A stretch of DNA of 64,000 bases from Ylistrum balloti. Lineage: Eukaryota. The DNA lies in assembly GCF_031769215.1 (NCBI RefSeq), contig NW_026782177.1, forward strand, positions 682,001 to 746,000, in the 5' to 3' direction. A program made the translations under genes and the position numbers. The notes under the pieces are model-generated. The model saw only the letters and a program-made list of their open reading frames with translations, did no database searches and was not told the DNA's origin. How positions within the stretch are numbered: position 1 is the first letter of the stretch; the number at the start of each line of letters is the position of its first letter. Below are positions 4,027-17,665 of the stretch, piece after piece.

Positions 4027-4542
4027 ATGGTGTCAACTATACTCGCCTTCTTGTGTCGGATTATTCTGCTAATAACTTTCATAGCGAGCAATGATGAGCA
4101 CGTTCCTTCCTTTTATGGTCTACCTGGGTACAGTCTCGTGAGTTTACGTGCCTGGGAGAGTCTTCTAATACCACGTGATTTTAACTGGATTGTGAATATT
4201 CCACAGACGTTGATATCGCCATTGTGCAGTTTCGCCACTGTTTTAATCGAAGTCTGGACTTGGATAGAAAGGTGGACGAGTGATTTTTATTCATGGTTCG
4301 TTAAAAAAGATTATAAGACACTTCAGTGCGACATGAATGACGATTTCATCTTTCCGAACACCTTTTATCAAAATGTTCAGACTGTGGCACCACCAAGCAG
4401 TTTCTATGATAACAATACAGTAACCAGGCCTACAGATACCTCTATACCACAGAAGGATTTTAACTTATGTCTACTAGGTGTCGTGGTGCTATTGCTGGTG
4501 ATTGTGTACTTTTGTTGCAAAGAAAACGGAGAATTTTCGAAA
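4027..4542 (+). CDS. First coding exon of the USP gene model: hydrophobic leader, putative luminal region, TM helix
   Basis: MVSTILAFLCRIILLITFIAS leader; TM LCLLGVVVLLLVIVYFCC; ends AAA|GTAAGT (strong donor, phase 0). A pyrimidine-rich acceptor ending gcag at 4024 implies an upstream exon. Confidence 0.7.
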
Positions 4543-16500: not shown

Positions 16501-17665
16501 TAGAAAATATTAAGTTTTTTTCTGCCGCGATTTAAAGCGCCACAAGGATATAGTTTTTTTATACCACGATTTATAGTATAGAAAAGATTTAGTTTTTTTC
16601 TACCAAGATTTAAAGCGCCACAAGGATTTAGCTTTTTATATCACGATTTATAGTTTAGAAAGGATTTAGTTTTTTCTACCACGATTTAAAGCACCACAAG
16701 GATTTAGCTTTTTATATCACTATTTATAGTATAGAAAGGATTTAGTTTTTTTTTCTACCACGATTTAAAGCGCCAAAAGGATTTAGCTCTTTCTACCATG
16801 ATTTAAATTATCATTCTTTGATCGAAAGTTGGTATCACTTGATTACTTCCGTTACAGGACGGATTTGGAGGTTTACGGAAGATAGATAAGATGGTCACAT
16901 ATCCCAAGTACCTTAATGTCGCACCGTTTTGTTCTTCCGCTCTTCAGAAATATGAGGTAATTTTACTGTACTAACCAGCGTGTTAATTGTTTTCGGCTCT
17001 AGCAGTTTTTGGCTAGGGTGTATCACTTCCGTCGTACTTGTTCTGAAAAAACATAACTTTACGATTAGAAAAAAAAACCCTGATATATCGATTCATGAAG
17101 TCTTTATTTCATTTGTATCGAAAATATTTTGATAGACAAAGTATTTTCGTTTAAATTCTGTACGGATTTTCAATATTTCTGGTAAATGAAGACTTTGTCT
17201 TCCAAAAATGTTGTTACAGGGAATCATTGGCCCATGTGATTGCTAAAAATTACATTGATAAATCAAGTATCATCTTATTTACTTATACACTCCAACATAT
17301 CTTTAATCCAGTCCGGGAATACGACCTTAACTTGGTTTAAGTTGTTCGGAGTCGTCAGTCACAGTGGGTCGATTTACGGCGGCCATTACACTGCCTACGT
17401 CAGAACCAGCTCCCAGAATGCATCAGCTATCCGTGAAAGCTTTCTCCTGACTGCGTGGATTGATCCGGAACGAATTGAAGATGACATTAGGAAGTTTTGG
17501 GAGGACAGTTCTCACAGATGTAATATGTCACCTTCAGAACCACCACAGAACACCATTGATGAGGAATGGTATTACGTTAGTGACACAATGGTTCAGAAAT
17601 GTACTGAACGTGCGGCGACGCTTGACAGGAATGCTTTTATTCTCATGTATGAGAGGTGTTGTTAG
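4027..17665 (+). CDS. Multi-exon ubiquitin-specific protease (peptidase C19), USP16/USP45-like catalytic domain, with N-terminal leader, TM helix and charged helical repeat (~930 aa)
   Basis: Phase-compatible GT-AG exons: 4027-4542, 8416-8532, 8656-8985, 9383-9448, 10319-10366 (Cys box GIPNLGNTCYLNSLLQ), 11162-11236, 11656-11795, 12265-12364 (FNGHQQQDSFE), optional 13036-13083, 13451-13475, 14052-14140 (SRLVGGTFVTVWFYESCEH), 14467-14529, 14891-14995, 15184-15778 (CRIC), 16130-16206 (KKLMIIGLPPIFVAHI), 16858-16956 (RKIDKMVTYPKYLNVAPFCS), 17312-17665 (LFGVVSHSGSIYGGHYTAYVR...WYYVSDT...AFILMYER). The LAPFC-like and GVVxHSG..GHYTAY motifs match the USP16/45 group. Linkage of the first exon is inferred from phase only. 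Confidence 0.88.
5311..6346. repeat. Minisatellite, 20-bp unit (ctaagtttggtgttacttgt), ~52 copies, in USP intron 1
   Basis: Direct tandem repetition. Confidence 0.97.
6571..7103. repeat. Minisatellite, 46-bp and 36-bp units (gtaacaatacgtaacaaacccagttacactgacattgactacgtat)
   Basis: Tandem repetition; the short variant lacks one gtaacaatac block. Confidence 0.95.
8701..8952 (+). repeat. Coding 36-bp repeat, 7 x ESKQQAERRKQE, inside USP exon 3
   Basis: In-frame repeat within exon 8656-8985, which is bounded by aacag| and AGA|GTGAGT. Confidence 0.9.
9590..10260 (-). mobile_element. Degenerate 3' portion of a Penelope-like retroelement (RT C-terminal region plus 3' tail)
   Basis: Frameshifted minus-strand peptides KDTSKSAAYIDH, QLYDKCADYN, PFANFQFLDS, IRYSSTCS and EFYGRHSDLI resemble the molluscan RT motif series SASYLD / LYDKRDDFNF / IVNFPFL / LIRYSRAC / KFYGRHHDLV (recognised from memory). 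They are followed by a tail shared with 13769-13975. Confidence 0.7.
10319..10366 (+). CDS. USP Cys-box micro-exon (GIPNLGNTCYLNSLLQ)
   Basis: ttgcag|GGA...CAG|GTGGTA; 48 nt, phase 0-0; contains the catalytic Cys. Confidence 0.93.
10428..10615 (+). mobile_element. Diverged tRNA-derived SINE (family 1)
   Basis: A-box-like ggcgcagta, B-box-like gcttcgatttc, central gaccacgtggatttccttgggtattccg core, and tail catctgggctaacaagattgat matching the tail at 12880-12920. Confidence 0.65.
11349..11416. repeat. (GAT/GAC)n microsatellite, intronic
   Basis: Trinucleotide run; gives the spurious poly-Asp ORF 11307-11495. Confidence 0.9.
12455..12742. repeat. 33/34-bp minisatellite with ~101-bp three-unit higher-order period
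   Basis: Units ending aaaacccaaagt and aaaaactctagat recur in the order A,B',B,A,B',B,A. Confidence 0.9.
12824..12950 (+). mobile_element. Internally deleted tRNA-derived SINE (family 1) with duplicated 5' end
   Basis: 17-bp head agggtggtcgggtggcg is tandemly duplicated; A-box ggcgcagtggtaa is joined directly to tail cctcgcgcgcttccatccgggccaacaagagtgattaata and an A-rich end. Confidence 0.65.
13765..13975 (+). mobile_element. 5'-truncated tail-only copy of the Penelope-like element
   Basis: Colinear similarity to the reverse complement of 9600-9830 (translations MADVVDEAEDAQFSGT and MAGVVDEAEDTYSSGT). Confidence 0.65.
16370..16800. repeat. Degenerate ~38-39-bp minisatellite with two alternating variants, intronic
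   Basis: gatttagttttttctaccacgatttaaagcgccacaag alternates with gatttagctttttataccacgatttatagtatagaaaag. Confidence 0.85.
17312..17665 (+). CDS. USP terminal exon with His box and Ser-Asp motif
   Basis: atccag|TCC acceptor; SHSGSIYGGHYTAYVR, WYYVSDT, AFILMYERCC*. Confidence 0.93.
   Translation, partial: SGNTTLTWFKLFGVVSHSGSIYGGHYTAYVRTSSQNASAIRESFLLTAWIDPERIEDDIRKFWEDSSHRCNMSPSEPPQNTIDEEWYYVSDTMVQKCTERAATLDRNAFILMYERCC

What the first reader, a model, noticed from the sequence alone, without database searches (positions are those of the whole stretch)
4027..17665. Receptor-like, membrane-anchored USP16/45-type deubiquitinase
Seen in sequence: a complete USP catalytic domain (Cys box, QQQD, His box) is assembled from phase-compatible exons. 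Upstream in the same frame lie a 7x12-aa charged repeat, a KRKRK basic patch and an exon encoding a hydrophobic leader, ~125 aa with an NNT sequon, and a TM helix ending YFCC. Established knowledge: USP16/45 are soluble enzymes with an N-terminal ZnF-UBP; the known TM-bearing USPs are USP30 (short N-terminal anchor) and USP19 (C-terminal anchor). Inference: this is a lineage-specific paralog that swapped ZnF-UBP for a type I membrane module, placing a DUB on a rigid arm on the cytosolic face of ER/endosome/plasma membrane. It could act as a receptor-DUB, with palmitoylation at the CC.
Basis: partly seen in the sequence, partly recalled or inferred. Interest (0 to 1): 0.82.

Follow-up and report, generated by a model that had tools for sequence, protein, structure and literature searches.

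The report
Membrane-anchored USP16-like deubiquitinase in scallop
This scallop gene most likely encodes a ubiquitin-removing enzyme of the USP16/45 type that has lost its usual zinc finger and is tethered to a membrane by an N-terminal anchor; it belongs to a small scallop-only gene family with interferon-type promoter motifs, but the key splice in this gene still lacks RNA proof.

Summary
The window is from Ylistrum balloti. I assembled an intact 13-exon, 873-aa ORF (4027-17665, + strand). It has a Cys box, QQQD, a His box and the Cys-His-Ser triad typical of USP16/45/30. It also has the KRKRK patch, a 7.2 x 36-nt repeat predicted as one 108-residue helix, and a first exon with a hydrophobic leader, about 125 orphan residues and a TM helix ending in CC.

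No RNA run exists for this species, so the 4542>8416 junction is inferred, not shown. The support is indirect:
- The exon-1 frame has 0 stops against 11.9 expected (0 of 20,000 shuffles).
- A GTAAGT donor follows in phase 0, and exon 2 has no in-frame ATG.
- The Argopecten ortholog starts with a TM exon spliced the same way.
- A paralog with leader, ectodomain, TM and USP domain is confirmed by a spliced RNA contig.
- Four family genes share a phase-0 first exon preceded by an ISRE/IRF-like motif.

The gene belongs to a scallop-only clade without ZnF-UBP. A canonical USP16/45 lies on another contig. "Membrane-anchored paralog" is therefore supported (about 0.65). "Receptor" and palmitoylation remain speculation. 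NCBI annotates only a 295-aa fragment. I rate it a new variant of a known kind, of moderate interest.

The parts
4000..4011 (-). ISRE/IRF-E-like motif (AAAAGTGAAAGT on the minus strand), 16-27 nt upstream of the ATG. It sits inside a 21-nt block at 3996-4016 that is 19/21 identical to a block upstream of the Argopecten ortholog's first exon.
4027..4542 (+). Exon 1 (172 codons). Leader aa 1-21 (4027-4089), orphan segment aa 22-146 with an NNT sequon (4411-4419), TM aa 147-164 (4465-4518) ending in CC (4513-4518), then KENGEFSK. Donor AAA|GTAAGT in phase 0.
   Evidence: No homologue found. AF2 pLDDT 49.
4960..5060 (-). Intron 1: three tandem copies of an ISRE-like unit (ACTTTCGnTTTC...TTTTGG on the + strand). 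A further GAAACGAAAACGAAA lies near 5248 on the + strand. Possible enhancer or alternative promoter.
8416..8532 (+). Exon 2 (39 codons, phase 0-0). KRKRK at 8464-8478. No in-frame ATG. The frame opens exactly at the acceptor.
8656..8985 (+). Exon 3 (110 codons). Holds a 36-nt x 7.2 minisatellite (8700-8957, 96% identity) that encodes the QQAERRK(E/Q)EESK repeats. Predicted as one continuous helix.
10319..10366 (+). Exon 4: Cys box GIPNLGNTCYLNSLLQ. Catalytic Cys330 at 10343-10345.
11162..11236 (+). Exon 5 (VLSWTPLIGQQLAEQ...).
11656..11795 (+). Exon 6 (leaves in phase 2).
12265..12383 (+). Exon 7 with QQQD (12287-12298). The phase-compatible donor is TCG|GTATAA at 12384.
14052..14140 (+). Exon 8 (…VSRLVGGTFVTVWFYESCEH).
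14467..14529 (+). Exon 9 (VELTFQRFTSVSVPVPDLPQP).
15184..15778 (+). Exon 10: acidic insert of the USP domain (about 190 aa) followed by the conserved DLERGL...CRIC part. NCBI's partial model starts at a Met inside this exon.
16130..16206 (+). Exon 11 (KKTHKKLMIIGLPPIFVAHINKIEK).
16858..16956 (+). Exon 12 (DGFGGLRKIDKMVTYPKYLNVAPFCSS...).
17312..17665 (+). Exon 13: His box (His781 at 17384-17386), Ser846 as the third catalytic residue (17579-17581), C-terminus ...YERCC, and the stop codon.

Best explanation
The locus is one 13-exon gene of the scallop Ylistrum balloti. It encodes an 873-aa deubiquitinase of a scallop-specific clade derived from USP16/45. In this clade the N-terminal ZnF-UBP has been replaced by hydrophobic membrane anchors.

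In this gene the first coding exon supplies a signal-like leader, an orphan segment of about 125 aa, one TM helix and a juxtamembrane CC. Next come a basic patch and a charged single alpha-helix of about 16 nm. Last is a catalytic domain with a Cys330-His781-Ser846 triad and an acidic insert of about 190 aa.

Both plausible insertion modes (cleaved signal plus TM, or a two-helix hairpin), and the positive-inside rule, put the catalytic domain in the cytosol. There it would remove ubiquitin from membrane-proximal substrates. ISRE/IRF-type motifs at the first exon suggest induction by IRF transcription factors, that is, an immune-responsive gene.

Shown: the intact ORF, the motifs, the clade, the missing ZnF-UBP, and an RNA-backed paralog with the same architecture. 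Inferred: the exon 1-exon 2 splice in this species, the topology, which membrane, the IRF control and the substrates.
For: Gene model and family:
- Intact 13-exon ORF with GT-AG borders. The last four joins equal NCBI's model P0001.
- 61% identity to the Argopecten ortholog P0155 over 398 tree columns.
- USP16 is the best solved relative. The Ser triad is present (PMC10867860).
- A well-supported nine-member scallop clade (SH-aLRT 100) lacks ZnF-UBP. The canonical USP16/45 lies on C543.

Exon 1 is coding:
- 0 stops against 11.9 expected, 0 of 20,000 dinucleotide shuffles.

Exon 1 belongs to this gene:
- The upstream tandem paralog ends 6.3 kb before it.
- Exon 2 opens at its acceptor and has no in-frame ATG. 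The first in-frame ATG after it lies two codons before the Cys-box exon.
- The donor AAA|GTAAGT is in phase 0. A second haplotype changes it to GTGAGT, which is still consensus.
- The Argopecten ortholog begins with a 38-aa TM exon, spliced in phase 0 across a 2.4-kb intron to an exon that also starts with N and carries a basic patch.
- All four first exons examined end in phase 0 with |GTAAG.
- All four have an ISRE-like motif, in the same orientation, within about 130 nt upstream of their ATG. Background is 0.15 per kb.

Architecture is real at RNA level in a paralog:
- Logan contig L017 maps as 12 or more spliced pieces on the genomic locus L018. Its first exon carries the leader, ectodomain and TM.

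Other points:
- Charge: 8 K/R in the 30 aa after the TM against 2 in the 15 aa before it.
- Helix arm: AF2 gives one helix over residues 2-109 of exon 3, pLDDT 95.8.
- Oyster IRFs activate ISRE reporters (PMC5557890).
Against: - No RNA evidence for this species. NCBI's model for the gene is only 295 aa and starts inside exon 10.
- Exon 1 has no detectable homologue in the genome, in the protein databases or in the N-termini of clade members.
- A language-model 'recognition' score for exon 1 is low, and its AF2 model is poor.
- With stop codons excluded, codon usage does not pick out the reading frame.
- All 6 coding differences from a second haplotype in exons 1-3 are nonsynonymous. This fits weak constraint on the N-terminal part.
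- The exon 2 acceptor has a weak pyrimidine tract.
- The closest ortholog has no ectodomain, and some clade members (P0025) lack a clear TM.
- P0014, the outlying clade member, has no ISRE motif in the 1.5 kb upstream of its ATG.
Confidence: 0.65

Rival explanations
1. Exon 1 is a separate small gene. It would be a 182-aa single-pass membrane protein read through to the stop at 4573-4575, or one spliced to unseen exons. The USP transcript would then start from another, possibly non-coding, first exon, for example near the ISRE cluster at 4960-5060.
For: - The ORF continues 10 codons past the donor to a stop.
- An AATAAA lies on the + strand at 5177.
- The Argopecten ortholog has an alternative first exon (isoform X2).
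- A cluster of ISRE-like motifs lies in intron 1.
- No sequence homology ties exon 1 to the USP family.
Against: - The USP frame would then lack a start codon before Met319, two codons before the Cys-box exon.
- A consensus donor in the matching phase sits at the ORF's end and is kept in a second haplotype.
- The same first-exon structure and promoter motif occur in three other family genes.
Confidence: 0.15
2. The protein is membrane-anchored, but as a USP30-like signal anchor rather than a type I receptor-like protein. Translation or function would rest on the TM plus its basic flank, with only a short stretch outside. This could come from an internal Met at residue 103 or from an uncleaved leader forming a hairpin. 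The target would be an organelle outer membrane (mitochondria or peroxisomes) or the ER, and the 125-aa segment would not be a ligand-binding ectodomain.
For: - The ortholog P0155 has 13 aa, then a TM, then RNRRTIK. P0014, P0009 and P0022 also have a TM followed by a basic stretch just before the Cys box, as in USP30.
- USP30 is the second-best solved relative and shares the Ser triad.
- The ectodomain is an orphan with no confident fold.
Against: - The whole 172-codon frame is open from the first ATG, far beyond chance.
- The ATG at 4027 is the first one after the promoter-type motif, and its context has G at -3 and G at +4.
- Two RNA- or RefSeq-supported paralogs (P0010, P0007) do have a leader, 70-100 aa and then a TM.
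Confidence: 0.13
3. The N-terminal half is a decaying relic. Only the C-terminal 295-aa fragment annotated by NCBI is expressed, giving a catalytically dead product, and exon 1 is not used.
For: - NCBI's model XP_060071658.1 starts inside exon 10.
- All six coding differences seen in exons 1-3 are nonsynonymous.
Against: - All 13 exons keep open frames, matching phases and GT-AG borders.
- The Cys box, QQQD, His box and the Ser are all intact.
- The orthologs in Argopecten and Pecten keep the same exons.
Confidence: 0.07

Closest known systems
USP16 / USP45 (Ubp-M type deubiquitinases)
   Same: - Human USP16 is the best solved sequence relative of the catalytic domain.
- The triad is Cys-His-Ser, with the ...W(Y/F)x(I/V)SD... 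motif.
- A large insert splits the USP domain.
- NCBI names the clade members 'USP16-like' or 'USP45-like'.
   Different: - No N-terminal ZnF-UBP; a hydrophobic anchor, basic patch and charged helix take its place.
- It is not the ortholog. A canonical ZnF-UBP USP16/45 gene sits on another contig.
- The gene lies in a tandem array and evolves fast.
USP30 (outer mitochondrial/peroxisomal membrane DUB)
   Same: - An N-terminal TM anchor followed by basic residues shortly before the Cys box, in several clade members.
- A cytosol-facing catalytic domain.
- Ser as the third catalytic residue.
   Different: - Sequence is closer to USP16 than to USP30 in every comparison.
- This gene has an extra leader and an extracytosolic segment of about 125 aa.
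- It has a 150-aa charged linker between the TM and the Cys box.
- Targeting is unknown.
USP19 (ER tail-anchored isoform)
   Same: A membrane-tethered USP that faces the cytosol.
   Different: USP19 has a C-terminal anchor, different accessory domains (CS, MYND) and belongs to a different USP subfamily.
USP18 (interferon-stimulated USP)
   Same: An ISRE-type promoter motif suggests IRF or interferon-like induction of a USP-family enzyme.
   Different: USP18 is soluble, specific for ISG15 and belongs to another subfamily. Induction here is only inferred from motifs.

Membership tests
USP (peptidase C19) catalytic domain | Cys box with the catalytic Cys (GNTC..N..LQ) | tested here: met
   Exon 4 is GIPNLGNTCYLNSLLQ. 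Pfam PF00443 hit with E 5e-5 on the exon alone. Cys330 verified.
USP (peptidase C19) catalytic domain | His box and C-terminal motif | tested here: met
   Exon 13 hits PF00443 positions 197-254, E 2.3e-11. GGHYTAY with His781.
USP (peptidase C19) catalytic domain | A complete, uninterrupted domain once the exons are joined | tested here: met
   873-aa ORF from 13 exons, collinear with P0155 and P0002. Enzyme activity was not tested.
USP16/45 subfamily | Closest sequence relatives are USP16/45 | tested here: met
   Human USP16 (8wg5) is the top solved hit for the His exon and for P0010, P0014 and P0006. The next-best database hits outside the clade carry zf-UBP plus UCH.
USP16/45 subfamily | Ser as the third catalytic residue (shared with USP30) | tested here: met
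   WYYVSDTMV aligns with USP16 WFHISDTHV and USP30 WLWVSDDTV. The literature statement is in PMC10867860.
USP16/45 subfamily | N-terminal ZnF-UBP domain | tested here: not met
   No PF02148 hit in any exon or on this contig. None in clade members either.
USP16/45 subfamily | Orthology to USP16/45 (one-to-one position in the tree) | tested here: not met
   A canonical gene with a ZnF-UBP exon lies at C543:255812-266854. This gene falls in a separate scallop clade.
USP30 | N-terminal TM anchor plus basic flank before the Cys box | tested here: inconclusive
   A TM with basic residues after it is present. However, 150 aa separate it from the Cys box and a leader plus 125 aa precede it. Several clade members do fit the pattern.
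USP30 | Closest sequence relative is USP30 | tested here: not met
   USP30 scores below USP16 in all four comparisons and is not among the listed hits for P0014 and P0006.
Type I membrane receptor | Cleavable signal peptide | tested here: inconclusive
   Hydrophobic N-terminus with Kyte-Doolittle peak 2.47 over aa 1-23. No signal-peptide predictor was available.
Type I membrane receptor | Single TM helix with a cytosolic C-terminal domain | tested here: met
   Met by prediction only. Kyte-Doolittle peak 2.83 at aa 140-170, and 8 K/R after the TM against 2 before it. Not tested by experiment.
Type I membrane receptor | A folded, conserved ligand-binding ectodomain | tested here: not met
   No homologues found. 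AF2 pLDDT 49. The ortholog lacks this segment.
ISRE/IRF-regulated gene | GAAANNGAAA-type element at the promoter | tested here: met
   Motif at 4000-4011. The same motif type, in the same orientation, lies within about 130 nt of the ATG in three other family genes. IRF binding and induction were not tested.

The most novel reading that the evidence does not exclude
Scallops have evolved a family of membrane-tethered deubiquitinases, induced by IRFs, that derives from USP16/45. Members such as this one carry a fast-evolving extracytosolic domain. That domain would sense a luminal or extracellular cue (a pathogen or a ligand) and so control a cytosolic DUB held about 16 nm from the membrane on a rigid helix. 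This would be a true receptor-DUB acting in antiviral or innate signalling.
Probability: 0.1. Interest if true: 0.85.

Novelty: new variant of a known kind. Interest (0 to 1): 0.55.

Why it matters
Membrane-tethered USPs are few (USP30, USP19), and each has turned out to control a distinct organelle-level ubiquitin pathway.

A separate, independently anchored clade derived from USP16/45 would show how a soluble chromatin and cytosolic DUB can be re-targeted by exchanging one N-terminal module. This clade sits in tandem arrays, has hypervariable linkers and ectodomains, and carries interferon-type promoter motifs.

It would also add a candidate regulator to the still poorly mapped interferon-like antiviral system of bivalves.

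On the practical side, NCBI's annotation of this gene (295 aa, no catalytic Cys) is probably truncated and can be corrected.

Tried and rejected
1. RNA support. Two run searches found no RNA run for this organism. The single run laid (X1) is DNA of another haplotype and shows no joints.

2. Homology of exon 1. All of the following gave nothing significant:
- own-genome six-frame search;
- word search of 5.8 billion proteins;
- ESM Atlas;
- BLASTP against the N-termini of P0007 and P0010;
- reverse searches of those N-termini in this genome;
- a word search with P0007 residues 1-146, which found only itself;
- tblastn of the Argopecten N-terminus on the window.

3. A tempting collinear BLASTP match of exon 1 aa 50-123 to the USP C-terminal lobe (RKxN..V.FP...PFCS...GHYTAY). 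Rejected: a family HMM scores it no better than 12% of shuffles.

4. Codon-usage coding potential. It separates exon 1 from introns only through the absence of stops. With stops excluded it is uninformative.

5. AF2 of exon 1 gave pLDDT 49, so I ran no fold search.

6. The Pecten maximus ortholog lies on a 50-kb contig that starts about 1 kb before its Cys-box exon, so its first exons cannot be seen. The P0007 genomic locus is not on record.

7. SNP density in exon 1 against its flanks: 1/516 vs 9/976, Fisher p = 0.18, not significant.

8. USP30 as the parent family was rejected on sequence rank.

The N runs at 26881-27371 and 34466-34596 were left untouched.
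Full report
**What is there**

The window is G000:C320:682001-746000 of a 648-Mb assembly. An NCBI protein that is 99% identical to the last exons names the organism as the scallop Ylistrum balloti.

On the + strand I assembled 13 exons with GT-AG borders and matching phases into one 873-aa ORF. The exons are 4027-4542, 8416-8532, 8656-8985, 10319-10366, 11162-11236, 11656-11795, 12265-12383, 14052-14140, 14467-14529, 15184-15778, 16130-16206, 16858-16956 and 17312-17665.

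- The last four joins are identical to NCBI's own partial model, P0001 (XP_060071658.1, 295 aa).
- Exons 4-13 are collinear with the Argopecten irradians ortholog P0155 and the Pecten maximus fragment P0002.
- Pfam UCH matches the Cys-box, QQQD and His-box exons.
- The catalytic residues are Cys330, His781 and Ser846.

All the described elements exist where stated.

- The first exon encodes MVSTILAFLCRIILLITFIAS, then about 125 residues with one NNT sequon, then LCLLGVVVLLLVIVYFCC followed by KENGEFSK.
- Exon 2 holds KRKRK.
- Exon 3 holds a 36-nt unit in 7.2 copies at 96% identity. It is therefore a young minisatellite. AlphaFold predicts the exon as one uninterrupted helix over residues 2-109 (pLDDT 95.8), about 16 nm if it is a single alpha-helix. 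This agrees with the 'rigid arm'.
- The exon-1 frame (3985-4572, 196 codons) has no stop, where its own dinucleotide composition predicts 11.9. None of 20,000 shuffles was open, and the other five frames have 9-15 stops. It is therefore very probably coding.

**Does exon 1 belong to the USP gene?**

No RNA run exists for this species. The only run is DNA from another haplotype. The splice 4542>8416 is therefore inferred. The arguments for it are these.

(a) A tandem paralog, USP-A (P0006, XP_060071656.1), ends at C320:679767, 6.3 kb upstream of exon 1. The USP-B start must lie between that point and exon 2.

(b) Exon 2 opens exactly at its acceptor and has no in-frame ATG. The next in-frame ATG lies two codons before the Cys-box exon.

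(c) Exon 1 ends AAA|GTAAGT in phase 0, matching exon 2. In the second haplotype the donor reads GTGAGT, which is still consensus.

(d) The Argopecten ortholog (isoforms X1 and X3-X7) begins with a 38-aa exon, MFKNIIQLTLENHHYVICMFVLTICFLLIFCRNRRTIK. This exon is spliced in phase 0 over 2.4 kb to an exon that also starts with N and carries a basic patch.

(e) The paralog P0010/P0158 has a leader, about 70 aa and a TM, followed about 10 residues later by the Cys box. It is represented by a 2.2-kb Logan contig. The contig maps as 12 or more spliced pieces on the genomic locus, and the leader, ectodomain and TM lie in the first exon, followed by 4.8 kb to the Cys-box exon. This shows the architecture in RNA for a family member.

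(f) All four first coding exons examined end in phase 0 with |GTAAG.

(g) All four are preceded, within about 130 nt of the ATG and in the same orientation, by a GAAANNGAAA(S)(Y) element. Here it is AAAAGTGAAAGT at 4000-4011. Background is 0.15 per kb. A 21-nt block around it is 19/21 identical between Ylistrum and Argopecten.

Taken together, I put the probability that exon 1 is the first coding exon of this USP at about 0.65-0.7.

**Evidence against, or weak points**

- Exon 1 has no detectable relative anywhere.
- Its AF2 model is poor.
- Codon usage without stops does not single out the frame.
- All six coding differences from the second haplotype in exons 1-3 are nonsynonymous.
- NCBI's pipeline did not model exons 1-9.
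- A read-through ORF to 4575 with an AATAAA at 5177, and a cluster of three more ISRE-like units at 4960-5060 in intron 1, leave room for a separate small gene or an alternative promoter.

**What family is it?**

- Human USP16 is the best solved relative of the His exon and of three clade members. USP30 comes second for the His exon and for P0010, and is not among the listed hits for P0014 and P0006.
- The third catalytic residue is Ser, a trait of USP16, USP30 and USP45 (PMC10867860).
- The nearest non-clade database hits carry zf-UBP plus UCH.
- A quick maximum-likelihood tree of 44 catalytic domains places the window protein with P0155 (SH-aLRT 99). Both fall inside a nine-member clade (SH-aLRT 100) made of Ylistrum, Pecten and Argopecten proteins and two RNA-derived sequences. 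This clade is apart from all ZnF-UBP-bearing USP16/45 proteins.
- A search with the N-lobe of USP-A found only these scallop proteins at E <= 1e-10.
- No clade member has a ZnF-UBP.
- The canonical USP16/45 of Y. balloti, with a ZnF-UBP exon, lies at C543:255812-266854.

The gene therefore works like a USP16/45-type enzyme but is not the ortholog. It belongs to a scallop-specific paralog clade.

**Membrane anchoring across the clade**

N-terminal hydrophobic segments followed by Cys and basic residues occur in P0155, P0009, P0010, P0007, P0014 and P0022, and more weakly in P0006. P0025 lacks one.

Two layouts exist:
- a short N-terminus plus a TM, as in USP30;
- a leader, 70-125 aa and then a TM (this gene, P0007 and P0010).

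The ectodomains of P0007 and P0010 are homologous to each other (E 4e-10) but not detectably to exon 1.

For this gene, both plausible insertion modes (cleaved signal plus TM, or a hairpin) leave the catalytic domain cytosolic. So does the charge bias: 8 K/R after the TM against 2 before it.

**Mechanism proposed**

I propose a cytosol-facing DUB tethered to a membrane and held away from it by a charged helix. It would trim ubiquitin from membrane-proximal substrates.

The ISRE/IRF-E-type motifs suggest IRF-driven induction. Bivalve IRFs are known to activate ISRE reporters (PMC5557890). The tandem arrays and the hypervariable linkers and ectodomains also fit an immune-related family.

Which membrane, which substrates, whether the CC is acylated and whether the ectodomain binds anything are all untested.

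**Novelty**

Literature searches found nothing on a membrane-anchored USP16-like family in scallops. The proteins exist only as automatic RefSeq models named 'USP16-like', 'USP45-like', 'USP27-like' or 'dentin sialophosphoprotein-like'.

TM-anchored USPs as a kind are known (USP30, USP19). I therefore rate this a new variant of a known kind.

That fits the family picture, but I did not test it.

The N runs were not touched. 

Noticed in passing
G000:C320:664800-679767 (L011-L012), just upstream of the window: Tandem paralog USP-A (P0006, XP_060071656.1, 815 aa). It has the same 16-codon Cys-box exon, a hydrophobic first exon (MSDRF...VAVFFLYPFCAVYVFRT) and a perfect GAAAGTGAAAGT motif 122 nt before its ATG.
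   Followed up: partly
L011: about 4050-4260 (C320:666050-666260): Four degenerate copies of the Cys-box exon start (acceptor plus GGAATACCCAA...GGTAAC) lie in tandem, about 55 nt apart, just upstream of the real Cys-box exon of USP-A.
   Followed up: no
L010 (C320:652800-658800): C-terminal exons of a DNA polymerase theta-like (family A polymerase) gene end about 6 kb before USP-A. The region between them is filled with satellite arrays.
   Followed up: no
window 9-1139, 2802-3622, 5309-6346, 6568-7107: Large tandem arrays with units of 59/307, 52, 20 and 46 nt flank exon 1 and fill about 1.6 kb of intron 1.
   Followed up: partly
window 8700-8957: The coding 36-nt repeat is 96% identical between copies, and contigs of a second individual do not span it. 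Copy number, and so arm length, is probably polymorphic.
   Followed up: partly
window 4244, 8495, 8503, 8660, 8677, 8692: All six coding differences between the assembly and run X1 in exons 1-3 change the amino acid: L>S, E>G, E>K, G>A, A>T and W>R.
   Followed up: partly
genome-wide: The 21-nt block TTCTACTTTCASTTTYGGTTT occurs 16 times in the genome with at most one mismatch. The reversed control occurs 0 times. This suggests a reused regulatory element.
   Followed up: partly
window 11340-11420: A GAT/GAC microsatellite (a poly-Asp reading frame) lies in the intron after exon 5. It is not part of the model.
   Followed up: no
L016 (Argopecten irradians CM084264.1:45314208-45351547): The ortholog sits in a tandem array of at least three or four USP genes. 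It carries a DSPP-like Ser/Asp-rich repeat insert of about 1,000 aa inside its catalytic domain, which explains its misleading RefSeq name.
   Followed up: partly
G000:C676:854148-867223: A second tandem pair of clade-related USP genes is here. It includes P0014, which has an N-terminal TM anchor followed by KPREKRKH and Asn rather than Ser at the third catalytic position.
   Followed up: partly
window 27559-28647 and 30794-31867, minus strand: Two long ORFs (363 and 358 codons) match the GPCR pair noted by another first-stage finding (s1-258910). I used them only as coding training data.
   Followed up: no
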